Assembly: GCA_964187785.1 (NCBI GenBank)
Contig: OZ076415.1
Location: 60,760,001-60,824,000 of the forward strand
Length of the DNA stretch: 64,000 nt
Source: Amphiscolops sp. MND2022
Lineage: Eukaryota
Direction of reading: 5' to 3'
The position numbers were made by a program, and so were the translations under genes. Shown here piece after piece: positions 12,301-58,494 of the stretch. A model generated the notes under the pieces. It made no database searches. It had not been told where the DNA came from and saw nothing but the letters and a program-made list of their open reading frames with translations. Position 1 is the stretch's first letter; every line of letters starts with the position of its first letter.

Positions 12301-12555
12301 AGTATGGTTCTATTATCCAGGGTCTAGGCAGGAAACTGTACCCTGACATAGACGCACACCGGTCCCAAGTGGACCCCGCCTTCTGGTACTCGACGTCAGT
12401 AGGGAGACGAGAGAGGATAGACACGGTACAGAGGAGATCGTACAGACACAGACCCAGCAATCTCAGAGCCCTCACCCATTCTGGCACCCAGGAGGAGAGT
12501 CCTAGACCTTGGACCACGGCCATACCCCCTGAGAGCAACTTCAACGTGCCCGCAG
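12301..12555 (+). CDS. Penultimate exon of an uncharacterised host gene
   Basis: GC-rich island in AT-rich DNA; caacag acceptor; open frame YGSIIQGLGRKLYPD...NFNVPA(G); a phase-1 GC donor matches the next exon. Confidence 0.6.
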
Positions 12556-12919
12556 GCAGGGTCCCCTAAATAATTTATTCTAATTACATTACATTGAATC
12601 GTTATATAAACAGATACTTGAGTATTTTCACCGGGCGCAGTTTCAAAGTCAGCTGAACTTTTGTGAATTAATCAAAAAACCACAACATCACACCAATGCG
12701 CAAACTTTTGAACGTTTTGTGTACGAATAGTTGCCTGAATGATTTGCAACTTGAAAACTAATTTTTCCTGGCTAAAAAGCTAAAGAGCAGATTTCTTGCT
12801 CCAAGTTTCAGCAACTTGATCATAATCCATACATATTATTTATGTACAACCAAAGTATAAGAGTTCAACAACCATCCAATGTTTTTCACATATCGACTAT
12901 AGCTGTACCCTTTCTGCAG

Positions 12920-13131
12920 GTGTGATTAATCAACGCCACCTACAATCCAAGATGTTTCATCGCTTCCCTAGGAAACATGGGGAGCCCAAGAAGGGGCTGC
13001 AGAAGATACCCACAGACATAGCCTACCCCAACGAGCCTTTCAGGACTTACCTCCAAACTCTGTGTTCTTCCCAGGAACCTTTCGCCAAACACAATTCTTG
13101 GAAATACTCTTACCACGATGTTAAAATTTAA
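12920..13131 (+). CDS. Terminal exon of the same uncharacterised gene
   Basis: tttctgcag acceptor; VINQRHLQSKMFHRFP...YLQTLCSSQEPFAKHNSWKYSYHDVKI*. Confidence 0.62.
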
Positions 13132-33600: not shown

Positions 33601-36600
33601 CAGGGTAAGCAGCAGAAGTGGTTGCAGCCCAGAGGTCTCTCCAGCTCACAGCCCCTCTCACACACGTCACAGTCTGCACCTGCCTGTTAACACGTCACAA
33701 TACATCTTCACCAAATATTACATGGAGAGGCATTGAAAACTCATTTCCCCAATATTTGTCATAGAAGTTTCAAATAAACACGAATGTGAACTAGATTGAT
33801 TTCCGAGAAATTTTTATCAAAGGCATTTCTCTTGAATATCAATAGTTTCCGAGATATGGGCAGAGAAAAGAGGTGTTCCAAACATTACTATCAATTAGGG
33901 GTTCCATTCTTTTATCACAGGACTGTTCATCATCTGGGGCAGGCACATACTACCAAACTGCCACAAAATAACTTTGAATCCCATTTCGTGACATTTAACG
34001 ATAGCGTTCAAATTTTTTTGTCTGTAAAGTATCCATCAAAATAGGAACTCCTGGAAAAATCGAATTATACATTTGATTCGGTATATTTGTTTTCTAAACA
34101 GAGATAGAAAAGTCGCCTTATATCACAAAATTAAACCCACTTTGAAAAAGTTCAATAAAACAAGGAGAATTCCAAATTATTGGAATCTTTAACAATAAAA
34201 CAAGAAGTATTCCAATATATTGGAATCTTTGTTTTTGGACATTCTGCAAATTAATAAGAGCCCTATATGAGTTCTTATTGACAATAACTACGGAAGATTT
34301 GTAACATATTGGCTTAAAAAGTATTAAACGTAAAACTGCCCTTGCTTTAGAAATGAAATGCTTTAAAAATTGATGAAATTTCACAAAACTTTTCAATTTT
34401 TGGTACCACTCCTCCTGAACGTATTATATCACTACTAAGACATATTAAACCCTTGGATATAAAAACTAGCTTCATCTTGTTGAAAACTAGCATTGAAAAG
34501 CGGATTTGTCAAAAGATCGGAAGACGCGACGTGATGAGTTTCATTAATCTATTATTATCTTAGTTAGCCCTGAAAACAAATGTTCAGCATTAGAATTTAT
34601 TTGGAAGATTAGTGTGTGATTGCAGGAGCCCCGGGTTATAACCCTTTGTGTATAAGTTCATTGAATGGGTTGACTTGAATGAGAAACGTTCGATCTTTAC
34701 AAAATGGTTTTACAGAATTGTTTTTAGTTTAGAATTACAAGCTGAAATGGTACATTGGAATCGATTTTCTCAAATCCAACAAATTCAATCTGTACCACAA
34801 GCAAACAAGAACCCAACCCCGTATAATGAGGAACTTCAATCAACTTAGAAGATCATCTCATTCAAAAGTCATTATTAGTTTCAAAATATGATATCAAGCG
34901 TTAAAAGACAATAACAGAAAAACATGGGAAACTTACAGTTCTTGAAACCTGAAATTGAAGTCTGAGTTAGTGAAAGAATGACAAGAACTGAAGAACAATA
35001 GGTAACTTATTTTATTGTGCTTACTGGCCTCATGAAGTGAAAGCTCACTAAAAAAGACTAATCTGGTAATCTCTGGTATAGACGATGACGTAAATTGAAA
35101 GAAACGTTAAATGCTCAAAAACTCTATTGCAGACTGATAGTCTCGAAAATAATGCGAAGTTCCCAATGAGTGGAGAGAAACCTCTTCAAAACTTTACAAG
35201 TAGTTCCATTAATTGTAAGACTTTTATAGACTGAAGTTTCGTTAAGTAGTTTTTATCTCAAGAAGTACAAAAACCAATAAGAACGACTCTTATTTTTCAA
35301 CTAGTAGCAATTAGCAGTAGAAAAGATCTCTAACCGTGGACTCGTCGGGCGCAGTGTGGACTACGTGACATATACGTTCACAAGTGTGATTTCCGCATGA
35401 GAGTTGTCTACCACAAGGTACTCCACACGAGTAGGGCTTTCCCTTTGCGCACTGGATGTTGATCGTCTCGTGCTGACCGAAGCAAGAGATCTCCACCTGA
35501 GTTCGACAGGGGGGACATGGCTGCTCCACTTGCTTGAACTGTACACTCTCGTTATTCAGCAATGTCTGAAAGAGCAGACGTCATCAGAGAAATGTACATT
35601 TGAATTGAAAAACTTGGTCTCAAACTGAAATAAGAAAAAAGCGACTTTAAATTCTGCTTGAAAATCAGAGTCAACATGCCAAAGTTGACATACACTGCGC
35701 GAAACGGATGCCAACGAGCAGATGAAAACTGACAGGGAAGACAAAGAATAGGTTGAATGTCAGAACTTCGGTAATGGGCAAGAAAGGATACCAATCAATT
35801 GAATGACAATGTGAAACTGAAGTCAACAAAAAGAACTTCTCAGAACGGTTGTAATCATTGACTGAAGGAGACACAAGGGTTCACCCATTGCTGGGAGGTG
35901 ACTCGAAACAGCCTCGTTCAAACGTAAGCATCACTTGAAAAACAGGCAACAGAGGACACCAACCAAAGAACAGACATTGCGAAACTAACGAAAGGAAACA
36001 AGAACTCAGAACTGTGGTGATCATTGACTAAAGGAGACACCAGGGTTCACCCATTGCCGGGAGGGGACTCGAAACAGCCCCCTTCAAACGTAAGCATCAC
36101 TTGAATAACAGGCAACAGAGGACACCAATCAATGAACAGACATTGCGAAACTAACGAAAGTAAACAAGAACTCCTCAGAACAGTTTTAATCATTGACTGA
36201 AAGAGACACCAGGGTTCACCCATTGCTGGGAGGTGACTCGAAACAGCCTCGTTCAAACGTAAGCATCACTTGAATAACAGTCAACAGAGGACACCAACCA
36301 AAGCGACATTGCGAAACTAACGAAAGTCAACAAGAAGAACTCCTCAGAACAGTTTCAATTAATGACTGAAAGACACACCAGGGTTCAACCATTGCTGGGA
36401 GGTGACTCGAAACAGCCTCGTTCAAACGTAAGCATCACTTGATTAACAGGAAACAGAGGACACCATTCAATGACCATTGCGAAATTAACGAAAGTAAACA
36501 AAAAGAACTTCTCAGAACGGTTGTAATCATTGACTGAAGGAGACACCAGGGTTCACCCATTGCTGGGAGGTGACTCGAAACAGCCTCATTCAAACGTAAG

Positions 36601-39600
36601 CATCACTTGAACAACAGGCAACAGAGGACACCAATCAAAGAACAGACATCGCGAAACTAACGAAAGTAAACAACAACTCCTCAGAACTGTTGTAATCATT
36701 GACTAAAGGAGACACCAGGGTTCACCCATTGCCGGGAGGGGACTCGAAACAGCCTCGTTCAAACGTAAGCATCACTTGAACAACAGGCAACAGAGGACAC
36801 CAACCAAAGAAGAGACATTGCGAAACTAACGAAAGTAAACAAAAATTCCTCAGAACTGTTGTAATCATTGACTGAAGGAGACACCAGGGTTCAACCATTG
36901 CTGGGAGGTGACTCGAAACAGCCTCGTTCAAACGTAAGCATCACTTGATTAACAGGAAACAGAGGACACCATTCAATGACCATTGCGAAATTAACGAAAG
37001 TAAACAAAAAGAACTTCTCAGAACGGTTGTAATCATTGACTGAAGGAGACACCAGGGTTCACCCATTGCTGGGAGGTGACTCGAAACAGCCTCATTCAAA
37101 CGTAAGCATCACTTGAACAACAGGCAACAGAGGACACCAATCAAAGAACAGACATCGCGAAACTAACGAAAGTAAACAACAACTCCTCAGAACTGTTGTA
37201 ATCATTGACTAAAGGAGACACCAGGGTTCACCCATTGCCGGGAGGGGACTCGAAACAGCCTCGTTCAAACGTAAGCATCACTTGAACAACAGGCAACAGA
37301 GGACACCAACCAAAGAAGAGACATTGCGAAACTAACGAAAGTAAACAAAAATTCCTCAGAACTGTTGTAATCATTGACTGAAGGAGACACCAGGGTTCAC
37401 CCATTGCTGGGAGGTGACTCGAAACAGCCTCGTTCAAACGTAAGCATCACTTGATTAACAGAAAACAGAGGACACCAATCGATGACCATTGCGAAATTAA
37501 CGAAAGTAAACAAAAAGAACTTCTCAGAAGGGTTGTACTCATTGACTGAAGGAGACACCAGGGTTCACCCATTGCTGGGAGGTGACTCGAAACAGCCTCG
37601 TTCAAACGTAAGCATCACTTGAAAAACAGGCAATAGAGGACACAAACCAAAGAGAGACATTGCGAAACTAACGAAAGTAAACAAGAAGAACTCCTCAGAA
37701 CAGTTTCAATCATTGACTGAAAGACACACCAGGCTTCACCCATTGCTGGGAGGTGACTTGAAACAGCCTCGTTCAAACGTAAGCATTACTTGATTAACAG
37801 AAAACAGAGGACACCAATCGATGACCATTGCGAAATTAACGAAAGTAAACAAAAAGAACTTCTCAGAAGGGTTGTACTCATTGACTGAAGGAGACACCAG
37901 GGTTCACCCATTGCTGGGAGGTGACTCGAAACAGCCTCGTTCAAACGTAAGCATCACGAACAACAGGCAACAGAGGACACCAACCAAAGAACAGACATTG
38001 CGAAACTAACGAAAGTAAACAAGAACTCCTCAGAACTGTTGTAATCATTGACTGAAAGAAACACCAGGGTTCACCCATTGCTGGGAGGTGACTCGAAACA
38101 CCCTCGTTCAAACGTAAGCATTACTTGATTAACAGGAAACAGAGGACACCAATCGATGACCATTGCGAAATTAACGGAAGTAAACAAAAAGAGCTTCTCA
38201 GAACGGTTGTAATCATTGACTGAAAGAGACACCAGGGTTCACCCATTTCTGGGAGGTGACTCGAAACAGCCTCGTTCAAAAGTAAGCATCACTTGATTAA
38301 CAGGAAACAGAGGACACCAATCAATGACCATTGCGAAATTAACGAAAGTAAACAAAGAGAACTTCTCAGAACGGTTGTAATCATTGACTGAAGGACACAC
38401 CAGGGTTCACCCATTGCTGGGAGGTGACTCGAAACAGCCTCGTTTAAACGTAAGCATCACTTGAATAACAGGCAACAGAGGACACCAACCAAAGAAGAGA
38501 CATTGCGAAACTAACGAAAGTCAACAAAAATTCCTCAGAACTGTTGTAATCATTGACTGAAGGAGACACCAGGGTTCACCCATTGCTGGGAGGTGACTCG
38601 AAACAGCCTCGTTCAAACGTAAGCATCACTTGATTAACAGGAAACAGAGGACATCAATCATTGACCTTTGCGAAAATAACGAAAGTAAACAAAGAGAACT
38701 TCTCAGAACGGTTGTAATCATTGACTGAAAGACACACCAGGGTTCACCCATTGCTGGGAGGTGACTCGAAACAGCCTCGTTCAAACGTAAGCATCACTTG
38801 ATTAACAGGAAACAGAGGACACCAATCGATGACCATTGCGAAACTAACGAAAGTAAACAAGAAGAACTCCTCAGAACAGTTTCAATCATTGACTGAAAGA
38901 CACACCAGGCTTCACCCATTGCTGGGAGGTGACTTGAAACAGCCTCGTTCAAACGTAAGCATCACTTGATTAACAGAAAACAGAGGACACCAATCGATGA
39001 CCATTGCGAAATTAACGAAAGTAAACAAAAAGAACTTCTCAGAAGGGTTGTACTCATTGACTGAAGGAGACACCAGGGTTCACCCATTGCTGGGAGGTGA
39101 CTCGAAAGAGCCTCGTTCAAACGTAAGCATCACGAACAACAGGCAACAGAGGACACCAACCAAAGAACAGACATTGCGAAACTAACGAAAGTAAACAAGA
39201 ACTCCTCAGAACTGTTGTAATCATTGACTGAAAGACACACCAGGGTTCACCCATTGCTGGGAGGTGACTCGAAACACCCTCGTTCAAACGTAAGCATTAC
39301 TTGATTAACAGGAAACAGAGGACACCAATCGATGACCATTGCGAAATTAACGGAAGTAAACAAAAAGAACTCCTCAGAACAGTTTCAATCATTGACTGAA
39401 AGACACACCAGGCTTCACCCATTGCTGGGAGGTGACTTGAAACAGCCTCGTTCAAACGTAAGCATCACTTGATTAACAGAAAACAGAGGACACCAATCGA
39501 TGACCATTGCGAAATTAACGAAAGTAAACAAAAAGAACTTCTCAGAAGGGTTGTACTCATTGACTGAAGGAGACACCAGGGTTCACCCATTGCTGGGAGG

Positions 39601-42600
39601 TGACTCGAAAGAGCCTCGTTCAAACGTAAGCATCACGAACAACAGGCAACAGAGGACACCAACCAAAGAACAGACATTGCGAAACTAACGAAAGTAAACA
39701 AGAACTCCTCAGAACTGTTGTAATCATTGACTGAAAGACACACCAGGGTTCACCCATTGCTGGGAGGTGACTCGAAACACCCTCGTTCAAACGTAAGCAT
39801 TACTTGATTAACAGGAAACAGAGGACACCAATCGATGACCATTGCGAAATTAACGGAAGTAAACAAAAAGAGCTTCTCAGAACGGTTGTAATCATTGACT
39901 GAAGGAGACACCAGGGTTCACCCATTGCTGGGAGGTGACTCGAAGCAGCCTCGTTCAAACGTAAGCATCACTTGATTAACAGGAAACAGAGGACACCAAT
40001 CGATGACCATTGCGAAACTAACGAAAGTAAACAAGAAGAACTCCTCAGAACAGTTTCAATCATTGACTGAAAGACACACCAGGCTTCACCCATTGCTGGG
40101 AGGTGACTTGAAACAGCCTCGTTCAAACGTAAGCATCACTTGATTAACAGAAAACAGAGGACACCAATCGATGACCATTGCGAAATTAACGAAAGTAAAC
40201 AAAAAGAACTTCTCAGAAGGGTTGTACTCATTGACTGAAGGAGACACCAGGGTTCACCCATTGCTGGGAGGTGACTCGAAACAGCCTCGTTCAAACGTAA
40301 GCATCACGAACAACAGGCAACAGAGGACACCAACCAAAGAACAGACATTGCGAAACTAACGAAAGTAAAGAACTCCTCAGAACTGTTGTAATCATTGACT
40401 GAAAGACACACCAGGGTTCACCCATTGCTGGGAGGTGACTCGAAACACCCTCGTTCAAACGTAAGCATTACTTGATTAACAGGAAACAGAGGACACCATT
40501 CGATGACCATTGCGAAATTAACGAAAGTAAACAAAAAGAGCTTCTCAGAACGGTTGTAATCATTGACTGAAGGAGACACCAGGGTTCACCCATTGCTGGG
40601 AGGTGACTCGAAACTGCCTCGTTCAAACGTAAGCATCACTTGATTAACAGGAAACAGAGGACACCAATCAATGACCATTGCGAAATTACCGAAAGTAAAC
40701 AAAGAGAACTTCTCAGAACGGTTGTAATCTATGACTGAAAGACACACCAGGGTTCACCCATTGCTGGGAGGTGACTCGAAACAGCCTCGTTCAAACGTAA
40801 GCATCACTTGAATAACAGGCAACAGAGGACACCAACCAAAGAAGAGACATTGCGAAACTAACGAAAGTAAACAAAAATTCCTCAGAACTGTTGTAATCAT
40901 TGACTGAAGGAGACACCAGGGTTCACCCATTGCTGGGAGGTGACTTGAAACAGCCTCGTTCAAACGTAAGCATCACTTGATTAACAGGAAACAGAGGACA
41001 CCAATCATTGACCTTTGCGAAATTAACGAAAGTAAACAAAGATAACTTCTCAGAACGGTTGTAATCATTGACTGAAAGACACACCAGGGTTCACCCATTG
41101 CTGGGAGGTGACTCGAAACAGCCTCGTTCAAACGTAAGCATCACTTGATTAACAGGAAACAGAGGACACCAATCGATGACCATTGCGAAATTAACGAAAG
41201 TAAACAAAAAGAACTTCTCAGAAGGGTTGTACTCATTGACTGAAGGAGACACCAGGGTTCACCCATTGCTGGGAGGTGACTCGAAACAGCCTCGTTCAAA
41301 CGTAAGCATCACGAACAACAGGCAACAGAGGACACCAACCAAAGAACAGACATTGCGAAACTAACGAAAGTAAACAAGAACTCCTCAGAACTGTTGTAAT
41401 CATTGACTGAAAGACACACCAGGGTTCACCCATTGCTGGGAGGTGACTCGAAACACCCTCGTTCAAACGTACGCATTACTTGATTAACAGGAAACAGAGG
41501 ACACCAATCGATGACCATTGCGAAATTAACGAAAGTAAACAAAAAGAGCTTCTCAGAACGGTTGTAATCATTGACTGAAGGAGACACCAGGGTTCACCCA
41601 TTGCTGGGAGGTGACTCGAAACTGCCTCGTTCAAACGTAAGCATCACTTGATTAACAGGAAACAGAGGACACCAATCATTGACCTTTGCGAAATTAACGA
41701 AAGTAAACAAAGAACTTCTCAGAACGGTTGTAATCATTGACTGAAAGACACACCAGGGTTCATCCATTGCTGGGAGGTGACTCGAAACAGCCTCGTTCAA
41801 ACGTAAGCATCACTTGATTAACAGGAAACAGAGGACACCGATCGATGACCATTGCGAAACTAACGAAAGTAAACAAGAAGAACTCCTCAGAACAGTTTCA
41901 ATCATTGACTGAAAGACACACCAGGCTTCACCCATTGCTGGGAGGTGACTTGAAACAGCCTCGTTCAAACGTAAGCATCACTTGATTAACAGAAAACAGA
42001 GGACACCAATCGATGACCATTGCGAAATTAACGAAAGTAAACAAAAAGAACTTCTCAGAAGGGTTGTACTCATTGACTGAAGGAGACACCAGGGTTCACC
42101 CATTGCTGGGAGGTGACTCGAAACAGCCTCGTTCAAACGTAAGCATCACGAACAACAGGCAACAGAGGACACCAACCAAAGAACAGACATTGCGAAACTA
42201 ACGAAAGTAAACAAGAACTCCTCAGAACTGTTGTAATCATTGACTGAAAGACACACCAGGGTTCACCCATTGCTGGGAGGTGACTCGAAACACGCTCGTT
42301 CAAACGTAAGCATTACTTGATTAACAGGAAACAGAGGACACCAATCGATGACCATTGCGAAATTAACGAAAGTAAACAAAAAGAGCTTCTCAGAACGGTT
42401 GTAATCATTGACTGAAGGAGACACCAGGGTTCACCCATTGCTGGGAGGTGACTCGAAACAGCCTCGTTCAAACGTAAGCATCACTTGATTAACAGGAAAC
42501 AGAGGACACCAATCAATGACCATTGCGAAATTAACGAAAGTAAACAAAGAGAACTTCTCAGAACGGTTGTAATCATTGACTGAAAGACACACCAGGGTTC

Positions 42601-45600
42601 ACCCATTGCTGGGAGGTGACTCGAAACAGCCTCGTTCAAACGTAAGCATCACTTGAATAACAGGCAACAGAGGACACCAACCAAAGAAGACATTGCGAAA
42701 CTAACGAAAGTAAACAAGAACTCCTCAGAACTGTTGTAATCATTGACTGAAGGAGACACCAGGGTTCACCCATTGTTGGGAGGTGACTCAAAACAGCCTC
42801 GTTCAAACGTAAGCATCACTTGATTAACAGGAAACAGAGGACACCAATCGATGACCATTGCGAAATTAACGAAAGTTAACAAAAAAAACTTCTCAGAACG
42901 GTTGTAATCATTGACTGAAGGAGACACAAGTGTTCACCCATTGCTGGGAGGTGACTCGAAACAGCCTCGTTCAAACGTAAGCATCACGAACAACAGGCAA
43001 CAGAGGACACCAACCAAAGAACAGACATTGCGAAACTAACGAAAGTAAACAAGAACTCCTCAGAACTGTTGTAATCATTGACTGAAAGACACACCAGGGT
43101 TCACCCATTGCTGGGAGGTGACTCGAAACACCCGCGTTCAAACGTAAGCATTACTTGATTAACAGGAAACAGAGGACACCAATCGATGACCATTGCGAAA
43201 TTAACAAAAGTAAACAAAAAGAACTTCTCAGAACGGTTGTAATCATTGACTGAAGGAGACACCAGGGGTCACCCATTGCTGGGAGGTGACTCGAAACAGC
43301 CTCGTTCAAACGTAAGCATCACTTGATTAACAGGAAACAGAGGACACCAATCATTGACCTTTGCGAAATTAACGAAAGTAAACAAAGAGAACTTCTCAGA
43401 ACGGTTGTAATCATTGACTGAAAGACACACCAGGGTTCACCCATTGCTGGGAGGTGACTCGAAACAGCCTCGTTCAAACGTAAGCATCACTTGATTAACA
43501 GGAAACAGAGGACACCAATCGATGACCATTGCGAAATAAACGAAAATTAGCAAAAAGAACTTCTCAGAACGGTTGTATTTATTGACCGAAGGAGACACCA
43601 GGGTTCACCTATTGCTGGGAGGTGACTAGAAACAGCCTCGTTCAAACGGAAGCATCACTTGAATAACAGGCAACAGAGGACACCAACCAAAGAAGAGATT
43701 GCGAAACTAACGAGAGTAAACAAGAACTCCTCAGAACTGTTGTAATCATTGACTGAAGGAGACACCCGGGTTTACCCATTGCTGGGAGGTGACTCAAAAC
43801 AGCCTCGTTCAAACGTAAGCATCACTTGATTAACAGGAAACAGAGGACACCAATCGATGACCATTGCGAAATTAACGAAAGTTAACAAAAAGAACTTCTC
43901 AGAACGGTTGTAATCATTGACTGAAGGAGACACAAGGGTTCACCCATTGCTGGGAGGTGACTCGAAACAGCCTCGTTCAAACGTAAGCATCACTTGAATA
44001 AGAGGAAACAGAGGACACCAATCATTGACCTTTGCGAAATTAACGAAAGTAAACAAAGAGAACTTCTCAGAACGGTTGTAATCATTGACTGAAAGACACA
44101 CCAGGGTTCACCCATTGCTGGGAGGTGACTCGAAACAGCCTCGTTCAAACGTAAGCATCACTTGATTAACAGGAAACAGAGGACACCAATCGATGACCAT
44201 TGCGAAATTAACGAAAATTAGCAAAAAGAACTTCTCAGAACGGTTGTATTCATTGACTGAAGGAGACACCAGGGTTCACCTATTGCTGGGAGGTGACTCG
44301 AAACAGCCTCGTTCAAACGGAAGCATCACTTGAATAACAGGCAACAGAGGACACCAACCAAAGAGATTGCGAAACTAACGAAAGTAAACAAGAACTCCTC
44401 AGAACTGTTGTAATCATTGACTGAAGGAGACACCCGGGTTTACCCATTGCTGGGAGGTGACTCAAAACAGCCTCGTTCAAACGTAAGCATCACTTGATTA
44501 ACAGGAAACAGAGGACACCAATCGATGACCATTGCGAAATTAACGAAAGTTAACAAAAAGAACTTATCAGAACGGTTGTAATCATTGACTGAAGGAGACA
44601 CAAGGGTTCACCCATTGCTGGGAGGTGACTCGAAACAGCCTCGTTCAAACGTAAGCATCACTTGAATAACAGGCAACAGAGGACACCAACCAAAGAAGAG
44701 ACATTGCGAAACTAACGAAAGTAAACAAGAACTCCTCAGAACTGTTGTAGTCATTGACTGAAGGAGACACCAGGGTTCACCCATTGCTGGGAGGTGGCTC
44801 AAAACAGCCTCGTTCAAACGTAAGCATCACTTGATTAACAGGAAACAGAGGACACCAATCAATGACCATTGCGAAATTAACGAAAGTTAACAAAAAGAAC
44901 TTCTCAGAACGGTTGTAATCATTGACTGAAGGAGACACCAGGGTTCACCCATTGCTGGGAGGTGACTCAAAACAGCCTCGTTCAAACGTAAGCATAACTT
45001 GAATAACAGGCAACAGAGGACACCAACCAGAGAAGAGACATTGCGAAACTAATGAAAGTAAACAAGAACTCCTCAGAACTGTTGTAATCATTGACTGAAG
45101 GAGACACCAGGGTTCACCCATTGCTGGGAGGTGACTCAAAACAGCCTCGTTCAAACGTAAGCATCACTCGATTAACAGGAAACAGGACACCAATCAATGA
45201 CCATTGCGAAATTAACGTAAGTAAACAAAAAGAACTTCTCAGAACGGTTGTAATCATTGACTGAAAGACACACCAGGGTTCACCCATTGCTGGGAGGTGA
45301 CTCGAAACACCCTCGTTCAAACGTAAGCATTACTTGATTAACAGGAAACAGGACATCAATCGATGACCATTGCGAAATTAACGAAAATTAGCAAAAAGAA
45401 CTTCTCAGAACGGTTGTAATCATTGACTGAAAGACACACCAGGGTTCACCCATTGCTGGGAGGTGACTCAAAACAGCCTCGTTCAAACGTAAGCATAACT
45501 TGAATAACAGGCAACAGAGGACACCAACCAGAGAAGAGACATTGCGAAACTAATGAAAGTAAACAAGAACTCCTCAGAACTGTTGTAATCATTGACTGAA

Positions 45601-48600
45601 GGAGACACCAGGGTTCACCCATTGCTGGGAGGTGACTCAAAACAGCCTCGTTCAAACGTAAGCATCACTCGATTAACAGGAAACAGGACACCAATCAATG
45701 ACCATTGCGAAACTAACGAAAGTAAACAAGAACTCCTCAGAACTGTTGTAGTCATTGACTGAAGGAGACACCAGGGTTCACCCATTGCTGGGAGGTGGCT
45801 CAAAACAGCCTCGTTCAAACGTAAGCATCACTTGATTAACAGGAAACAGAGGACACCAATCAATGACCATTGCGAAATTAACGAAAGTTAACAAAAAGAA
45901 CTTCTCAGAACGGTTGTAATCATTGACTGAAGGAGACACCAGGGTTCACCCATTGCTGGGAGGTGACTCAAAACAGCCTCGTTCAAACGTAAGCATAACT
46001 TGAATAACAGGCAACAGAGGACACCAACCAGAGAAGAGACATTGCGAAACTAATGAAAGTAAACAAGAACTCCTCAGAACTGTTGTAATCATTGACTGAA
46101 GGAGACACCAGGGTTCACCCATTGCTGGGAGGTGACTCAAAACAGCCTCGTTCAAACGTAAGCATCACTCGATTAACAGGAAACAGGACACCAATCAATG
46201 ACCATTGCGAAATTAACGTAAGTAAACAAAAAGAACTTCTCAGAACGGTTGTAATCATTGACTGAAAGACACACCAGGGTTCACCCATTGCTGGGAGGTG
46301 ACTCGAAACACCCTCGTTCAAACGTAAGCATTACTTGATTAACAGGAAACAGGACATCAATCGATGACCATTGCGAAATTAACGAAAATTAGCAAAAAGA
46401 ACTTCTCAGAACGGTTGTAATCATTGACTGAAAGACACACCAGGGTTCACCCATTGCTGGGAGGTGACTCAAAACAGCCTCGTTCAAACGTAAGCATAAC
46501 TTGAATAACAGGCAACAGAGGACACCAACCAGAGAAGAGACATTGCGAAACTAATGAAAGTAAACAAGAACTCCTCAGAACTGTTGTAATCATTGACTGA
46601 AGGAGACACCAGGGTTCACCCAGTGCTGGGAGGTGACTCAAAACAGCCTCGTTCAAACGCAAGCATCACTTGATTAACAGGAAACAGGACACCAATCAAT
46701 GACCATTGCGAAATTAACGTAAGTAAACAAAAAGAACTTCTCAGAACGGTTGTAATCATTGACTGAAAGACACACCAGGGTTCACCCATTGCTGGGAGGT
46801 GACTCGAAACACCCTCGTTCAAACGTAAGCATTACTTGATTAACAGGAAACAGGACATCAATCGATGACCATTGCGAAATTAACGAAAATTAGCAAAAAG
46901 AACTTCTCAGAACGGTTGTATTCATTGACTGAAGGAGACACCAGGGTTCACCCATTGCTGGGAGGTGACTCGAAACAGCCTCGTTCAAACGGAAGCATCA
47001 CTTGAATAACAGGCAACAGAGGACACCAACCAAAGAAGAGATTGCGAAACTAACGAAAGTAAACAAGAACTCCTCAGAACTGTTGTAATCATTGACTGAA
47101 GGAGACACCAGGGTTTACCCATTGCTGGGAGGTGACTCAAAACAGCCTCGTTCAAACGTAAGCATCACTTGATTAACAGGAAACAGAGGACACCAATCAA
47201 TGACCATTGCGAAATTAACGAAAGTAAACAAAGAGAACTTCTCAGAACGGTTGTAATCATTGACTGAAAGACACACCAGGGTTCACCCATTGCTGGGAGG
47301 TGACTCGAAACAGCCTCGTTCAAACGTAAGCATCACTTGAATAACAGGCAACAGAGGACACCAACCAGAGAAGAGACATTGCGAAACTAATGAAAGTAAA
47401 CAAGAACTCCTCAGAACTGTTGTAATCATTGACTGAAGGAGACACCAGAGTTCACCCATTGCTGGGAGGTGACTCAAAACAGCCTCGTTGAAACGTAAGC
47501 ATCACTTGATTAACAGGAAACAGGACACCAATCAATGACCATTGCGAAATTAACGAAAGTAAACAAAAAGAACTTCTCAGAACGGTTGTAATCATTGACT
47601 GAAAGACACACCAGGGTTCACCCATTGCTGGGAGGTGACTCGAAACACCCTCGATCAAACGTAAGCATTACTTGATTAACAGGAAACAGAGGACACCAAT
47701 CGATGACCATTGCGAAATTAACGAAAATTAGCATAAGAACTTCTCAGAACGGTTGTAATCATTGACTGAAGGAGACACAAGGGTTCACCCATTGCTGGGA
47801 GGTGACTCGAAACAGCCTCGTTCAAACGTAAGCATCACTTGAATAACAGGCAACAGAGGACAGCAACCAAAGAAGAGACATTGCGAAACTAACGAAAGTA
47901 AACAAGAACTCCCAGAACTGTTGTAATCATTGACTGAAGGAGACACCAGGGTTCACCCATTGCTGGGAGGTGGCTCAAAACAGCCTCGTTCAAACGTAAG
48001 CATCACTTGATTAACAGGAAACAGAGGACACCAATCAATGACCATTGCGAAATTAACGAAAGTTAACAAAAAGAACTTTTCAGAACGGTTGTAATCATTG
48101 ACTGAAGGAGACACCAGGGTTCACCCATTGCTGGGAGGTGACTCGAAACAGCCTCGTTCAAACGTAAGCATACCTTGAATAACAGGCAACAGAGGACACC
48201 AACCAGAGAAGAGACATTGCGAAACTAATGAAAGTAAACAAGAACTCCTCAGAACTGTTGTAATCATTGACTGAAGGAGACACCAGGGTTCACCCATTGC
48301 TGGGAGGTGACTCAAAACAGCCTCGTTCAAACGTAAGCATCACTTGATTAACAGGAAACAGGACACCAATCAATGACCATTGCGAAATTAACGAAAGTAA
48401 ACAAAAAGAACTTCTCAGAACGGTTGTAATCATTGACTGAAAGACACACCAGGGTTCACCCATTGCTGGGAGGTGACTCGAAACACCCTCGTTCAAACGT
48501 AAGCATTACTTGATTAACAGGAAACAGAGGATACCAATCGATGACCATTGCGAAATTAACGAAAGTAAACAAAAAGAACTTCTCAGAACGGTTGTAATCA

Positions 48601-51600
48601 TTGACTGAAGGAGACACCAAGGTTCACCCATTGCCGGGAGGGGACTCGAAACAGCCCCGTTCAAACGTAAGCATCTCTTGAATAACAGGCAACAGAGGGC
48701 ACTAATCAATGAACAGACATTGCGAAACACGAAAGGAAACAAGAAGAACTCATCAGAACGATTGTAATCATTGACTGAATGAGACACCAGGGTTCACCCA
48801 TTGCTGGAACGTGACTCGAAACAGCCTCGTTCAGATAACTTGAATAAAAGGCAACACAATACTTAAATCAATGGACAGACATTGCGAAACTAACGCATTG
48901 CGAAAAGACATTTGAAACTTTTCTGAACGTTTGTAATCATTGACTGAATGAGACACCAGGGTTCAATCGTCAACAACACACAAGACAGTTATGAATACTA
49001 TCAATAAGGTACGCAAACGCGAGGGATTGTCCCAAAGGTACGAATCGGAGAAAAGACTAGTGACTTCAAGGGCAAAAAATTACAATAAATACACGTGAAT
49101 GGTAACGCATTTCGAGCTAATCAATGCATGTTAAGAGGTGAAGTTGCAACGTTCTAAATTACAAACAATGCATATATGTTATTTACTTATTCGTCAATCG
49201 CCTTAAACTTTGCATACTCTGTGATTGGCCTAGAAACAAACCTTTGGTTTTATCTTTGTCCATACCGCGGAGTGACACTTAGCGAGACATTTGTGTCCAC
49301 ATTTATCGATGATCATCTCGCACACTTTGTCACAGGGTGGGCAGTAGCCAGAATGGCATTTATGGGGCTTGGCAGTCGGGTGATGACACGAAGGAGGCCT
49401 CCTGTGAATCAAAACACATCAGTCACTTTGGAGCAAAATATCTCCATAGTAAACGTTGAAATCAAATATTCAAATATTTTTTCGTAGCCTTGTTGAAACA
49501 AGGGACACCTCAGGACATTTTTGCTCAAAAATTTGCTCAAAAATTGATAATCGTAGTTGAAAATGCTGTTCACATCCTAGAATTCAAGTTATGAGATTTC
49601 AAATGAAGTTCAAAATGCTTCACGACCGTAACATTATCAGATGAAGTTTTTAATAGCAGCTTTCGGTGAAAAGCTTCGGTGGGGATGCCTGGCTTCAAAC
49701 GTACGTGCCAAAATTGGCTGTTTTTAGGAAAAAAACTCACGTACTTCAGTTGTGGATCGTTAATTGAATTTGGTCAAACGACAACATTCGAATGAGTTCA
49801 AACAACGGTCACAGTTTCACATAGAAAAACCCGGTGAAGCACTTTGTCAGTGCTTTGAGTAAAAGCTACTATTGGCTGCTAATACATGCAGAAAAATATA
49901 CAATTACTTGTCTAGAGTATTTATATTTTAAAAAAATTCGGGGGAAAATTTCTTCAGGGGTCAATAGGTCAGGTTAGAGATGATATCTCACATGCAGCTC
50001 TTCTGGCAGTTGGGTCTTTTGACGACCTTTTCGCGGCCACATGGCACTTCTATGGAGGTGGCTCCACACGGACAGGACAGTACCTTGGTCTGCTGACAGG
50101 GGTAGCAGGGTCCAGCGTGGCATCTCTGCTGGCACCGGTGGTTGGCACATGGCAAGTTCTTCAGACACACTTGATCGCACGGTGCACAGTCCCCCACACA
50201 ACACTTCTTCTTACACTGAAACACATCCACATTAATCGTGGTTGGCTTTCATTTGGATTGAAATTATTGATTGAAAACCACAAGGCAAAAAACCAATTAT
50301 TCAACGATAAATTGAGTAATTTCATCTCAGAGCAAGTTTTTGGATGTTTCGGTTCCGAGTCGGTTTATAGTCTTCGATATAGCTTGGTTGGAGGTGCTGA
50401 AAACGCGCTCCAATTGTCTTCAGTTCGGAGGAAAAGGCAATCGGCTGGACAATAGAGATGAATGGAGATTGGGACATCTCCCACAGAAATTCAGCGGACA
50501 AAAATAATGAGGGAAAAGCTTTTGAAAAAACGAGAAAATCGGCTGCATCTCTAATTCTAATTGTTTTTCGAAAAACTTTTGCAGAAAGCCGGGAAACGAT
50601 TTCCTAACAGTAGCAAATTTCTTCAACATATTTTTATGTTGACAAAAACTGCTATTTCAAAATACTCATTCAGGAAATTTTTTTCGGTTGTTTGAAAAAC
50701 ATTGCCAGCACTCATGATTGTCGTCGACGCAGTTTGAATTACATGTACCTGATGTCTGCCACAGTTGCGATAGTTGCCACATTTCAGATCGCAAGTGAAG
50801 TTTTGGGAGCACTGGATGAGTCTGGTTTTCCTAGTGCAGGGACACTGCTTCCTCACTGGCTCCTTACAGGAACCACAGTCCCCCGAGTGACACCTCTCGC
50901 TGCAGAAGTGGTCCCCACAGGCCAGCAGTTTGCCACACTCATTGTCACACGTGGCAGCAACGTCGGTGCACTCCAGTCTGGAGTAGGTCACTGAGCCACA
51001 GGGACACGTTCTATTGGCAAGCAGGGGTCACCCTTTATATTACAATACCAATATATTGCAACTCATCAGCGATTGCGCTATTAATAACTAACTCCGATAG
51101 TTTAGAAAATAGCTAAAGCAACAAATTTTGTGCTTCGTTCTCAGTCGATGACACTGTCATAGTCAAAATCACTCAGCAATGTCACTATTCAGATCTTGAG
51201 TAAATCAACTGTATACAAGCATAGTAGGACAAACATTGTTTCTACCATTTTTATGCATCAAAATGAAGTTTCCTCCAAGCGCGGGTACAAAACGTCTTCA
51301 CCACTTGAAAATGAAACGTTTCTCTACAGTTTCAGTACAAATTAAATACCTTGGAAGGATTGAATTGCTTTCATTTTTGTGTTCAAAAATGGCATTGGCT
51401 ACTGACTGGCAAAACAAAAACCAGCGTTTAATGGAGTTACACCAGTGACTACAAGTAGGGGAACCCTGCCTATTGCCGCTATTGGGGCACTGGCCACAAC
51501 CATCGGGCGAGGACACGTGGCAGGTAGCTTTGCATGTATGCTGGCCACAATCGAACAACTTGCCACACACAGTCTCACACTTCCATTGGACACTGGAGCA

Positions 51601-54600
51601 CAACGTGAGTCTCTCCTTGGCCCCACACTCGCACTTCTCAACAGCTGTTAGTTTGCACTGACCGCAGTCTCCTGGGTGACACAGGTCGGCACAATAGTGT
51701 TTGCCACAGTTGAGTAGTTTGCCACACTTGTTACTGCACATCCAGATCTGCGCACTGCAGCGCCTCGGAACTGGACTCGAGGAGCCGCATTGGCATTTGA
51801 CCTGTACCAGTGAATTGTAAACTACATACAATAAGTAGACGGAAGAGGAAAATTGGAAAAAAAGTTTTTGATGGAGGTCTCCCGTAAGCCGCATAGTGAT
51901 GAAAACCATCAGGCGTCCTTTATGCTCGCAAAACGTTTCGTTACTAGTAAAAATTGCTTCGATGAAAACAAATCAGAAAAGTCGCATAGAAAAAACGCCG
52001 GTCTTAAAAAACAAAATTCAGATATTTTGAAAATCTCAATGCTGAAAACTGTAAAAAAGGGAAAATTTTCAAAACAAAAATTAGAATTTTGAGAAGTCTC
52101 AGTGCTGAAAAATCGGAAAGAGGGGACCCTTCGGGATTTTTGAACAACCATTCTATTGCAAAATATCAAAAAATTGAAGGGGCCCTCTGGGGACATTAAA
52201 AAATTTCGGGGGAAAATCTCACAAGGCCGAAGAAAGGGGAAGTCTCACAGTGCCGAAAACAGTGCGAAAGGGGACCCTTCTGCTGTGGAATGCTTGTAAA
52301 AAAATATTGGCGCATACGCACCGGTTTGAACACGAAACTTCTGGGTTGAAAAGCAGGCATCTTACCACTAGACCATGAACGCCTAAACTGCGACTTGCCG
52401 ACTGAAACGAGTTGTCGCGCGGAAAAAAGCATCCGCACTTTCCCATAACACTTGCTTATTGCAAGTGTAATAAATCCTAGATTCGATTTTTGATTGAACA
52501 GAAACGCTGCTCTTAACTCGAAATTTTCAAAAAACATGTCGAATTTCAAACACTACTCATCAAATGAGGATAGATTTGGTACAATTCACTGACCTGCACT
52601 GTCTGGGGGCAAGGAGGACAGGGTCCGGGATGGCACAGAAGGGTGCATCGATGGCCACAGGGTTCATGGTCACTGGGTGAGATGAGAGGCTTGTCGCACG
52701 ATTGGCCACAAGCGTGGGGCACAAGCCAAGGATCGAACTCGGGATCACAGGTTTTGCCACAGAAACAAAAGTAGTATTCGGGAATGGAATCAACGGAGTA
52801 CTCGTATCGGCACTTAGGGCTACAACAAAAGATTCAAACAATGATATCAAATGAAAACCAAGAGTCAAAAATTTTTGACTCGAACGTTATATAAAAGGAT
52901 TATATCAGAAAAGTCAAAAGATCGGTTTTTCAGCTTTAGCACAGGTCAAATTAAAAATGCCGGTAAGTCCACTACCTACCAGATGACATTGCGATACAAG
53001 ATGTGACTACTAACCAATCCCATGTGAGGTTCGTAGAATGCATGTCATGTCGCGATGTGTCGCCATGTGCTTCTAAACGCATCTTGGTTTGCTCAATACT
53101 GTCTCTGGCCCACTTCTGAATACACTGCAAGTGGTACATGCAAGAACACCTCTCACAACTCCACACAGGCTGCGTTCTCTTCACCGAGGAGATGCAGATC
53201 AGACAAGACACTGCTCCACTTTGACACACTTCCAGCAGCAACTTCGAGATCCTCCCGGCATCCTCGGTTGTACCTAACATTTCAAATTAAAGTTATTTTC
53301 CGACCCCACATTTTATAAATGGGGGAGGAGAATCATGATCTGTGATGCGTTTTTTTTCCAAATTCTGCCAAAAGTCCACTTGACTATCCATCCACTTGAC
53401 GACTATCTCCTCTATCGCTAAGAAGGGGAGAAGCTAGCTTAGAAGGGGAATATTATCTAAAGTTAAAAAGGGAATAAGATCTCAAAGGAATAAGATCTAA
53501 AATCACTGAATTTTAGATCTTATTCTTTAGATCCTATTCCCCCTCCCAAAAAAGCTATGGCTTAGTCGGTGAAGGCGAAAAGGGCGGAAAATATCCCGGT
53601 GCTTAGCGGGCGTCTTGTTGGTAATAGTCACGAAAATAATACAAAAGAGATGCAACAAATGATCTCAAGGCCCGAAAATTAGCCTCTAATTACACTTCAT
53701 ATCACGTCTTTGTTTTCATTGTTCTTGCCTGAACTTCGAGGCATTTAATTTGGCATAAATTTCGACCACCCCATCAGAGTAACCGTGTAATATTCTACTT
53801 GTTAGAAACTGAGCAGTGTTTTTCGTAGTGATTTAACTTCATGAGCTTAGTATTTGAAAAAAGTAGAAAAAGACTTGAATGACATTTTAGTCTCAGATAG
53901 TTCAGTAAAAAGATAGCCCCGGAAAGTTATTTTCATCAAATTAAAATGTAAAACCTTTTCCGAATAATCTTGAAGAAAGTATTATAAATATACTTTGATC
54001 GGTCGTTCATTACATGGTTACTATAACATGATCGCGATTACCTGTTCGGAATGATTGAGATTGTATCGACTTACTTTCTGACTCATACTTTTCGAAAGTA
54101 GCGCTTATGATGCTTTGATAATGGGACCCATTTTCCGAATCATCGTCTTCATCATCGTCTGATGACTGGTACTCGATGACAGAGGGGTTGACATGAGTGC
54201 CTCGGTTGTTGTTATTGGAACCTCTTTTGACATTGATCACTTCCTCCGTAGACTCAGTTGACCCAGCCGGTGACACTTGTGATGGCGAAGGAGAGTTGGA
54301 ATTGTTGTCATCACAGCCTACATCAGTCGTTATTCCATATCCAGAACCCACCTCTGTCAATAGATAGGACTGCCCTCCTCGACCACTGCTGTGAGCCCCA
54401 ACACCGTTATTCGACATATGAGCTCGCATTGGGGAGCTCACGGTATATTCAACATAAGTGGGAGGCGGGTAGAAACTCATCTGAGTCGGGTGATTCGAAG
54501 CATGTCCAGAGGAGTATACATAGTCGCCGTATGGAGCAACAGTTTGAATTGGCATCATTGGACTGTACACTCTGAAATCCCCGCCTGTAAAAAGCACCAC

Positions 54601-57719: not shown

Positions 57720-58494
57720 AGTGCTTTCGTATGCTTCGAAAATTGGGCTTTTGCAATCGTATTACTTCTGTTATGTATAACAACAATCAAAAATAATGCA
57801 CTGACAGTGATATTGCAAATGCCTTGAACGAATACCTTGGTTCAATGTTTTCAAAAGTTGACTTTGTCTCAGACTCAGAAACTAAAACTGTACCATGTTT
57901 TTTTAAATGATCAGCAACTCTCACTTATTGAAGTGGAAACGCTTCTGCTGAAATGTGATGATTCGATTTTTAGGGGTCTAAATCAAGTGCCTCCGTTTGT
58001 TCTTCGGAACGCATCAAATATACTGGTTCCACTTGTTGTCGAACTATTCACATGTATACTAAAAGATCGAACGTGGCCTCTTGTTTGGAAAGTTTCGCCC
58101 ATAACATCACTGCATGAAAAAGGCCCGAAACCTTCCAATGAGAATTATTGCTCAATCAGTATTCTTTGCAAACTCTCACTCATTCTGGAGCGGAATATTT
58201 TCAACTATTTGTTTCCAAAAGTTTTCAAGCTTATTCACAAAAAACAACAAGGTTTCATGAAAGCTCGAAGCACTGTAACTCAAATGATAACATGTTTAGA
58301 CCTCGTCTACCGCCATGGATTCCAATACTCCCACTTTGTTTATTGATTTTGATATGCAAAAGGCATTCAATTCAGAACCTCATCATTTGCTATTATCGAA
58401 CCTCAATCGTTTCAGTTTATGTGCTGGTTTCATGAAACTGATGGATTTTTACCTTGCAAACAGGTTTCAAATTGTCAAAGTAAGAGAAAGTCTC

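What the first reader, a model, noticed from the sequence alone, without database searches (positions are those of the whole stretch)
51011..51477. Adjacent intron 5 is a GC-AG intron with TIR-like ends and a near-duplicated target site
Seen: only AATAG|GCAGGG keeps exons 5 and 6 in frame; nearby GT donors give frameshifts or a stop. The 5' end GCAGGGTTCCCCT is the approximate inverse of AGGGTGACCCCTGC near the 3' end. The intron's last 8 nt (GCCAATAG) nearly duplicate the exon's last 8 nt (GGCAATAG). The donor is far from the usual AG|GCAAGT of GC-AG introns. Inferred: a second introner family in which the TIR gives the GC donor and the TSD gives the AG acceptor. A 2-nt offset between TIR and TSD weakens the case.
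Basis: partly seen in the sequence, partly recalled or inferred. Interest (0 to 1): 0.72.

Follow-up and report, generated by a model that had tools for sequence, protein, structure and literature searches.

The report
Newly gained transposon-like GC-AG intron
A 459-base intron in an acoel worm's NFXL1 zinc-finger gene is missing from two related acoels, so it was gained recently; it looks like an inserted jumping-gene-like segment whose ends, together with the duplicated target site, supply unusual GC...AG splice signals.

Summary
The intron is real by comparative evidence. It spans window 51469-51011 on the minus strand (459 nt, GC...AG, phase 2).

- **Absent in relatives.** A related species carries exons 4, 5 and 6 as one open frame reading CPNSGNR|TCPCG, which is exactly the predicted junction. 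Symsagittifera roscoffensis also has one exon here.
- **New position.** Non-acoel animals have an old intron 23 nt further downstream instead. Intron 5 is therefore a lineage-specific gain.
Other in-frame splice pairs exist, but only GC-AG restores the conserved protein.
- **Imperfect end marks.** The inverted ends match 12/14 with one gap (p about 0.016). The 8-nt direct repeat matches 7/8. The two marks sit 2-4 nt out of register.
- **A class defined by its ends.** A second relative-absent GC-AG intron 39 kb away (12556-12919) starts with the same 13-14 nt. Two more introns elsewhere in the genome share this start, one with a clean 22-nt TIR and an abutting 8-bp TSD.
- **No sequence family.** The three introns tested, intron 5 among them, are single copy, and the four share no internal sequence.

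The scan has already noted hAT-made GC-AG introns elsewhere in this genome (s1-191865, s1-151654).

The parts
51470..51801 (-). Exon 5 of the NFXL1-like gene. It starts in phase 0 and ends two bases into an Arg codon (...CPNSGN + AG).
   Evidence: ORF and Pfam zf-NF-X1. 90% amino-acid identity to the relative's contiguous ORF. pN 0.057 against pS 0.88.
51011..51469 (-). Intron 5: 459 nt, GC...AG, phase 2. It is lineage-specific and single copy in the genome.
   Evidence: Absent from L013 and from S. roscoffensis. Own-genome searches find only the intron itself. No Rfam match.
51456..51468 (-). 5' terminal arm, CAGGGTTCCCCTA. Its first C is the second base of the GC donor. The same end is found on three other GC-AG introns.
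51021..51034 (-). 3' inverted arm, AGGGTGACCCCTGC. It also forms part of the pyrimidine-rich tract before the acceptor.
   Evidence: 12/14 with one gap. It pairs with the 5' arm in both the MFE and the centroid fold, z = -2.3.
51470..51477 (-). Exonic copy of the putative target-site duplication, GGCAATAG. The alternative register is GCAATAGG at 51469-51476.
   Evidence: The relative's uninterrupted site reads GGTAACAGG.
51011..51018 (-). Intronic copy of the putative target-site duplication, GCCAATAG. It carries the AG acceptor.
   Evidence: 7/8 identical to the exonic copy. It shares this genome's synonymous states (C, T) where the relative has T, C.
50749..51010 (-). Exon 6. Its first base completes the Arg codon, then TCPCGSV... 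follows. It ends before GTACAT.
12556..12919 (+). A second GC-AG intron (364 nt, phase 1) in an unrelated gene. It starts GCAGGGTCCCCTA and is also absent from the relative.
   Evidence: P0171 is a contiguous ORF reading ...NFDVPAG|VINQR.... The relative's uninterrupted site is CCTGCAGG.
51802..52594 (-). Intron 4 (context only). It is a GT-AG intron, also absent from both relatives, and its inner part is a high-copy repeat.

Best explanation
Intron 5 is a young, lineage-specific spliceosomal intron. It arose when a roughly 450-nt DNA segment with hAT-like ends inserted into the coding sequence of the NFXL1-like gene, at a site ending ...AATAGG.

How the splice signals arise:
- The insertion duplicated about 8 bp of target.
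- The last G of the left duplicate and the first C of the insert (CAGGGTTCCCC...) form a GC donor.
- The AG inside the right duplicate is the acceptor.
- The spliceosome therefore removes 'insert plus one duplicate' and restores the original reading frame (...CPNSGNR|TCPCG...).
- The inverted ends can pair in the pre-mRNA and bring the two splice sites together.

Shown here: the intron is absent in relatives, the position is new, the junction is the predicted one, the ends are shared with other introns, the intron is single copy, and the flanking exons are under purifying selection.

Inferred: the insertion was made by a transposase of hAT type, and the intron is actually spliced at GC/AG.
For: 1. 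Absence in relatives. A related species (ENA ERZ26859043, contig ctg78892) has exons 4-6 contiguous with the junction CPNSGNR|TCPCG, while it keeps the other introns. S. roscoffensis encodes residues 319-598 in one exon.
2. Polarity. S. roscoffensis is an outgroup: 56-61% identity against 86-90% between this genome and the relative.
3. New position. Glandiceps, Branchiostoma and Actinia have a conserved intron 8 codons downstream, not at this site.
4. The gene is single copy. Exons on both sides of the intron are under strong purifying selection, pN 0.06-0.07 against pS 0.84-0.88. The intron must therefore be removed precisely.
5. End marks. The direct repeat is 7/8 and the TIR is 12/14. The ends pair in the predicted fold.
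6. Shared 5' end. The 13-14-nt start occurs 11 times in 1.07 Gb. Two of those are in this window, and both are at the 5' end of relative-absent GC-AG introns.
7. Further members. The pattern AGGCAGGGT(N)CCC gives 30 hits, 7 of them at the end of ORFs of at least 100 codons (P 0.004-0.02).
   - L081 has a 22-nt TIR abutting the TSD ATTTCAGG/ATTGCAGG.
   - L085 splits an iGluR gene between Pfam Lig_chan-Glu_bd and Lig_chan, with a 13/15 TIR.
8. hAT transposase genes are abundant in this genome.
9. Precedent. [quoted passage not shown]
Against:
- Intron 5 has no other copy in the genome, and neither do the L081 and L085 introns.
- The four introns share no internal sequence.
- The end motif is not enriched genome-wide: 30 against 27, and 11 against 5.
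- In intron 5 the 3' arm sits 3-4 nt from the right duplicate. Being pyrimidine-rich, it could be complementary to the G-rich donor by composition alone.
- None of 30 hAT transposase loci carries this end.
- The donor GCAGGG is weak compared with the usual GCAAGT.
Confidence: 0.62

Rival explanations
1. The intron is a real gain, but it was not made by a transposon. A staggered double-strand break in the exon was repaired with filler DNA, which duplicated a few bases. The 'TIR' is either chance or a by-product of a G-rich donor facing a pyrimidine tract.
For: - Single copy, with no family.
- The TIR is weak, and TIR and duplication are out of register.
- No genome-wide enrichment of the end motif.
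- Short direct repeats at new introns are known from Daphnia (own knowledge: Li et al. 2009).
Against: - Random filler would not give the same 13-14-nt 5' end in a second gained intron 39 kb away.
- It would also not give the same 10-12-nt 5' end in L081 and L085, which have clear TIRs.
Confidence: 0.17
2. The intron is old, and it was lost independently in the relative and in S. roscoffensis, for example by cDNA-mediated removal of the adjacent introns 4 and 5.
For: Introns 4 and 5 are adjacent and both are missing in both relatives. This is the pattern expected from reverse-transcriptase-mediated loss.
Against: - It needs two independent double losses.
- No non-acoel outgroup has an intron at this position. 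They have one 23 nt downstream.
- A loss scenario does not explain the direct repeat, the shared ends, or the transposon marks on intron 4.
Confidence: 0.05
3. The segment is not removed at GC 51469 / AG 51011. Another in-frame pair is used, the intron is retained, or the insertion is an assembly or haplotype artefact.
For: - Other stop-free pairs exist, for example GT 51490 / AG 51011.
- There is no RNA evidence.
- The donor is weak.
Against: - Every alternative deletes or replaces residues that are invariant in all orthologs, namely the CPNSGNRTCPCG block.
- Read-through meets a stop codon 57 codons into the intron.
- The downstream exons remain under strong constraint.
- The second intron with the same donor also needs GC-AG to match the relative's ORF.
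Confidence: 0.06

Closest known systems
Introner-like elements of the dinoflagellate Polarella glacialis, class 12 (bioRxiv 10.1101/2020.10.14.339549)
   Same: - The 3' splice site is taken from the target-site duplication.
- The 5' splice site is built from the terminal G of an ...AGG duplication plus the initial C of the element, which gives a GC donor.
- The intron equals the element plus one duplicate.
   Different: - Those elements have a 5-nt duplication and hundreds of sequence-similar copies, and the host is a protist that commonly uses GC/GA donors.
- Here the duplication is about 8 nt, the ends are hAT-like, the host is an animal, and there are no similar copies.
Introners of Micromonas and Aureococcus (Huff et al. 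2016, as summarised in PMC11282704; surveys PMC9860276 and PMC12130899)
   Same: Short non-autonomous DNA transposons with TIRs and a TSD. One splice site is carried by the element and the other is created in the duplicated target.
   Different: - Introners are defined by many near-identical copies, which this intron lacks (tested and not met).
- They use GT donors and a 3-nt TSD in Micromonas.
- Neither survey paper mentions acoels or hAT.
MITE-derived non-canonical introns of the tunicate Fritillaria borealis (Henriet et al. 2019, via PMC11282704)
   Same: - An animal host.
- Species-specific intron positions.
- Ends with inverted repeats and TSD-like repeats.
- Non-GT donors.
   Different: - Fritillaria uses AG-AC/AG-AT ends and has an altered spliceosome.
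- Here the ends are GC-AG, which an ordinary U2 spliceosome accepts.
Maize Ac/Ds (hAT) insertions in exons that are spliced out of the pre-mRNA (own knowledge: Wessler and co-workers, 1987-1991)
   Same: A hAT element starting CAGGG with an 8-bp TSD sits in an exon and is removed by splicing, using sites at or near its ends.
   Different: - Ds splicing is usually imprecise and uses cryptic sites.
- Here removal would be exact, and the insertion is fixed in a conserved gene.

Membership tests
Introner / introner-like element (transposon-made spliceosomal intron) | The intron sits at a lineage-specific position and is absent from close relatives. | tested here: met
   - Absent in the relative and in S. 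roscoffensis.
- Non-acoel outgroups have an intron 8 codons away instead.
Introner / introner-like element (transposon-made spliceosomal intron) | Many sequence-similar copies sit in unrelated genes. | tested here: not met
   - Whole-intron and end-fragment searches of the intron's own genome find only the intron itself.
- As a positive control, intron 4's inner repeat gave more than 5800 candidates.
- Only 10-14 nt of the ends are shared with three other introns.
Introner / introner-like element (transposon-made spliceosomal intron) | Terminal inverted repeats. | tested here: inconclusive
   - 12/14 with one gap, p about 0.016 against shuffles.
- The 3' arm overlaps the pyrimidine tract and lies 3-4 nt from the duplicate.
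- The TIR is clear in the look-alikes L081 (22 nt) and L085 (13/15).
Introner / introner-like element (transposon-made spliceosomal intron) | A target-site duplication, with one copy inside the intron. | tested here: met
   - GGCAATAG against GCCAATAG, 7/8.
- The relative's uninterrupted site has a single copy.
- Chance is about 0.005-0.011 given that both copies end in AG.
Introner / introner-like element (transposon-made spliceosomal intron) | The intron is removed from RNA at the predicted sites. | not testable with these tools
- Indirect support only: the conserved protein is restored and the downstream exons are constrained.
hAT-superfamily non-autonomous element | An 8-bp target-site duplication directly flanking the TIRs. 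| tested here: inconclusive
   - Intron 5 has an 8-nt repeat, but it is 2-4 nt out of register with the 3' arm.
- L081 fits exactly: ATTTCAGG / ATTGCAGG abut the TIRs.
- L085 is off by 1 nt.
hAT-superfamily non-autonomous element | TIRs beginning with CAG/TAG-type ends (YARNG; own knowledge). | tested here: met
   Both arms of intron 5 begin CAGGG. The same holds for L081 and for the 5' arm of L085, whose 3' arm begins CAGTG.
hAT-superfamily non-autonomous element | An autonomous partner with matching TIRs is present in the genome. | tested here: inconclusive
   - hAT dimerisation domains are abundant: 2215 candidates, with open frames up to 697 aa.
- None of the 30 sampled loci (plus or minus 1.5 kb) carries the end.
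- The sample is small and may not reach the element ends.
U2-type GC-AG intron | GC at +1/+2, AG at the 3' end, a pyrimidine tract, and otherwise a strong donor consensus (AG|GCAAGT; own knowledge). | tested here: inconclusive
   - GC, AG and the tract CCCCTGCTTGCC are present.
- The donor GCAGGG matches the consensus only at +1, +2, +3 and +5. The usual compensation for a GC donor is therefore missing.

The most novel reading that the evidence does not exclude
This acoel lineage went through a burst of intron creation by hAT-type miniature elements whose ends double as GC...AG splice signals.
- What survives is a class of 'fossil introners' that can be recognised only by their conserved ends (G|CAGGGTTCCC ... 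GGRAACCCTG-N7, ending AG|G).
- Selection for splicing has kept those ends, while the insides and all non-intronic copies have decayed.
- Alternatively, some process places such ends on unrelated DNA.
- Either way, this would offer a traceable origin for a share of animal GC-AG introns.
Probability: 0.3. Interest if true: 0.75.

Novelty: new member of a known kind. Interest (0 to 1): 0.55.

Why it matters
Clear cases of intron birth in animals are scarce. Here the uninterrupted site is preserved in a sister species and in an outgroup, so the event can be read base by base. It shows how an insertion into an ...AGG site can become an exact GC-AG intron at once.

Four such introns share their ends but not their insides. 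If a genome-wide count confirms this class, acoels would join the few animal lineages with transposon-driven intron gain. It would also give a concrete source for non-GT donors.

The work gives the exon 5/6 junction of the NFXL1-like gene by comparison with orthologs. RNA confirmation is still needed.

Tried and rejected
- **Copies of intron 5.** The whole intron and each 120-nt end found only themselves in the genome.
- **Enrichment of the end motif.** None was convincing: 11 against 5, 783 against 497, 30 against 27 and 51 against 32.
- **Autonomous hAT partner.** None of 30 transposase loci carries the end.
- **Structured RNA hosted in the intron.** Rfam gave no match.
- **Coding status of other candidates.** Pfam on the upstream ORFs of eight more motif hits gave nothing, so they remain unconfirmed.
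- **Convolutriloba macropyga gene structure.** The record could not be retrieved. The window is not that species, since exon identities are 35-81%.
- **Rejected: a U12-type or sliding version of the ancient intron.** The ends do not fit, and the position is 23 nt and one phase away.
- **Rejected: a retrogene in the relative.** It keeps the other introns.
- **Left out: joining exons 5 and 6 for a search.** I used the relative's natural contiguous ORF instead.

Full report
**What is there**

The window lies in a 1.07 Gb genome (contig C7). On the minus strand it carries an NFX1/NFXL1-type zinc-finger gene. Exon translations hit Pfam zf-NF-X1 and a RING/PHD-like finger, and the best named relatives are NFXL1-like proteins of acoels.

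- Exon 5 is 51801-51470 and ends ...CCC AAT AGC GGC AAT AG.
- The next 459 nt (51469-51011) begin GCAGGGTTCCCCT and end ...AGGGTGACCCCTGCTTGCCAATAG.
- Exon 6 (51010-50749) starts A ACG TGT CCC.
- Splicing GC 51469 to AG 51011 gives ...CPNSGNR|TCPCGSV..., a phase-2 intron in an Arg codon.

**Is the junction right?**

Comparative evidence replaces it.

- A word search with exon 5 found one protein, P0001. It is a single uninterrupted 180-aa ORF on a 66-kb contig of ENA assembly ERZ26859043.
- Aligning that contig (L013) to the window shows that exons 4, 5 and 6 are contiguous there (L013 2771-3598). The other introns of the gene are kept, so it is not a retrocopy.
- At the site it reads AAT AGT GGT AAC AGG ACT TGT, which is PNSGNR-TCP with no gap.
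- The block CP.SG.R.CPCG has the same spacing in S. roscoffensis, Glandiceps, Littorina, Branchiostoma and Actinia.

One search lists 24 stop-free pairs near the site, for example GT 51490 / AG 51011. All of the alternatives delete or replace invariant residues.

Read-through of the intron reaches a stop codon 57 codons in. The gene is single copy. Exons 5 and 6 are both under strong purifying selection against the relative (pN 0.057 and 0.071, with synonymous sites saturated at pS 0.88 and 0.84). Precise removal at GC/AG is therefore the only reading that keeps this conserved gene working, but it remains an inference.

**Gain or loss?**

- S. roscoffensis NFXL1-like (P0153) maps to its genomic locus with residues 319-598 in one exon. 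That exon covers the equivalents of our exons 4-6.
- It is an outgroup. This genome and the relative are 86-90% identical in exons 5 and 6, while either is only 56-61% identical to S. roscoffensis or C. macropyga.
- Glandiceps, Branchiostoma and Actinia share an old intron 8 codons downstream, phase 1 where I could read the boundaries. None has one at our site. All three acoels have lost that old intron.

The simplest history is a gain of intron 5 (and of intron 4) in this lineage after it split from the relative. Two independent double losses is the alternative, which I rate at about 5%.

**Marks of insertion in intron 5**

- The last 8 exonic bases (GGCAATAG) recur as the last 8 intronic bases (GCCAATAG), a 7/8 match. 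Given the shared AG, the chance is about 0.005-0.011.
- The intronic copy carries this genome's synonymous states (C and T) where the relative has T and C. That is what a duplication of this lineage's own exon would give.
- The ends are inverted repeats: GCAGGGTTC-CCCT against GCAGGGGTCACCCT, 12/14.
- Only 1.5-1.7% of shuffles or random window segments score as well. The 3' arm is also the pyrimidine tract, so this figure overstates the case.
- In the fold, the two arms pair in both the MFE and the centroid structure (z = -2.3).

**The wider class**

- At 12556-12919 (plus strand) an intron starts GCAGGGTCCCCTA.
- The same relative assembly has a contiguous ORF across it, P0171, reading ...NFDVPAG|VINQR.... 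The uninterrupted site is CCTGCAGG. Our two copies read CCCGCAGG and TCTGCAGG.
- The 13-14-mer occurs only 11 times in the whole genome (control 5). Two of those 11 are these donors, 39 kb apart.

The looser pattern AGGCAGGGT(N)CCC gives 30 hits against 27 for the control, so there is no bulk enrichment. However, 7 of the 30 sit exactly at the end of an ORF of at least 100 codons. The conservative background is 7-10% of AG sites, giving P = 0.004-0.02. Two hits are clean.

- **L081** is a 306-nt GC-AG intron. It has a 22-nt TIR, CAGGGTTCCCTATAAATTGCTT against CAGGGTTTCCT-TAAATGGTTT. The TIR directly abuts an 8-bp duplication, ATTTCAGG / ATTGCAGG. Long ORFs lie on both sides.
- **L085** is a 402-nt GC-AG intron splitting an ionotropic glutamate receptor gene. 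Pfam finds Lig_chan-Glu_bd upstream and Lig_chan downstream. The TIR is 13/15.

All have the same plan: [xxxxxAG|G][CAGGGTT...element...][xxxxxAG|G]. Ends beginning CAGGG with an 8-bp duplication are hAT hallmarks (own knowledge). hAT transposase genes are very numerous in this genome.

**What does not fit a normal transposon family**

- Intron 5, L081 and L085 are each single copy. The same search readily finds thousands of copies of the repeat nested in intron 4.
- The four introns share no internal similarity.
- None of the 30 sampled hAT loci has this end.

One possibility is that the burst is old. Synonymous sites between the two species are saturated, so there has been time. Under that reading only the ends were preserved, because they serve in splicing. 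The other possibility is that the elements never shared more than their ends. I could not decide between these. Two earlier notes on this genome (s1-191865 on CSN2, s1-151654 on Kv3) describe hAT-made GC-AG introns, one of them also single copy. I treat them as leads that agree with this picture, not as evidence.

**Comparison with known systems**

- A GC donor made from the terminal G of an ...AGG duplication and the initial C of the element, with the acceptor taken from the duplication, is described for class 12 introner-like elements of Polarella glacialis.
- Element-plus-TSD splicing is the Micromonas/Aureococcus introner model. MITE-derived non-canonical introns are known in the tunicate Fritillaria.
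- The two large introner surveys do not mention acoels or hAT. The one paper that holds both 'introner' and 'acoel' (once each) is a study of Copia retrotransposon diversity in metazoans.
- Intron 5 works like an introner but fails the defining multi-copy test. I therefore file it as a new member of the broader known kind, the transposon-derived intron, and not as an introner family.

**Verdict**

The coordinates should be 51011-51469, and the 'only in-frame' claim is overstated.
- Confidence that this is a lineage-specific gained intron is about 0.9.
- Confidence that a hAT-like insertion with a TSD made it is about 0.6-0.65.

No exon joining was done for any search. I used the relative's natural contiguous ORF instead.

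Noticed in passing
window 35820-48833: A 13-kb tandem array (168-nt unit, about 78 copies, 88% matches) fills the long NFXL1 intron between the exons at about 49237 and 35568. Pieces of the same satellite lie in the homologous intron of the relative (L013 8516-8951). The unit contains CCAGGGTTCACCC, which resembles the arms of intron 5.
   Followed up: partly
window 51860-52475 (inside intron 4): The inner 615 nt of intron 4 belong to a very abundant repeat: more than 5800 candidate copies, the best at 81-83% identity. The outer roughly 120 and 60 nt of the intron did not match. Intron 4 is also absent from the relative and from S. roscoffensis.
   Followed up: partly
window 50987-50989 region (8 codons after the Arg codon split by intron 5): An ancient intron is shared by a hemichordate, amphioxus and a sea anemone at this codon, phase 1 where the boundaries could be read. 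It has been lost in all three acoels compared. The new intron sits 23 nt upstream of it.
   Followed up: yes
whole genome (G000), e.g. L056, L058, L059: hAT transposase dimerisation domains are very numerous: 2215 candidates, 116 of them at E <= 1e-10. Several have open frames of 600-700 aa in equal-scoring copies, which suggests recently active hAT families.
   Followed up: partly
window 12255-13131 (+): A small gene of unknown function (no Pfam search was run on it) has a counterpart in the relative that is a single 151-aa ORF, P0171. In this genome it is split by the second GC-AG intron.
   Followed up: partly
window 57837-58346 (+): A 169-aa ORF whose sequence looks like a fragment of a non-LTR retrotransposon reverse transcriptase lies upstream of the NFXL1 gene. 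This was judged by eye only.
   Followed up: no
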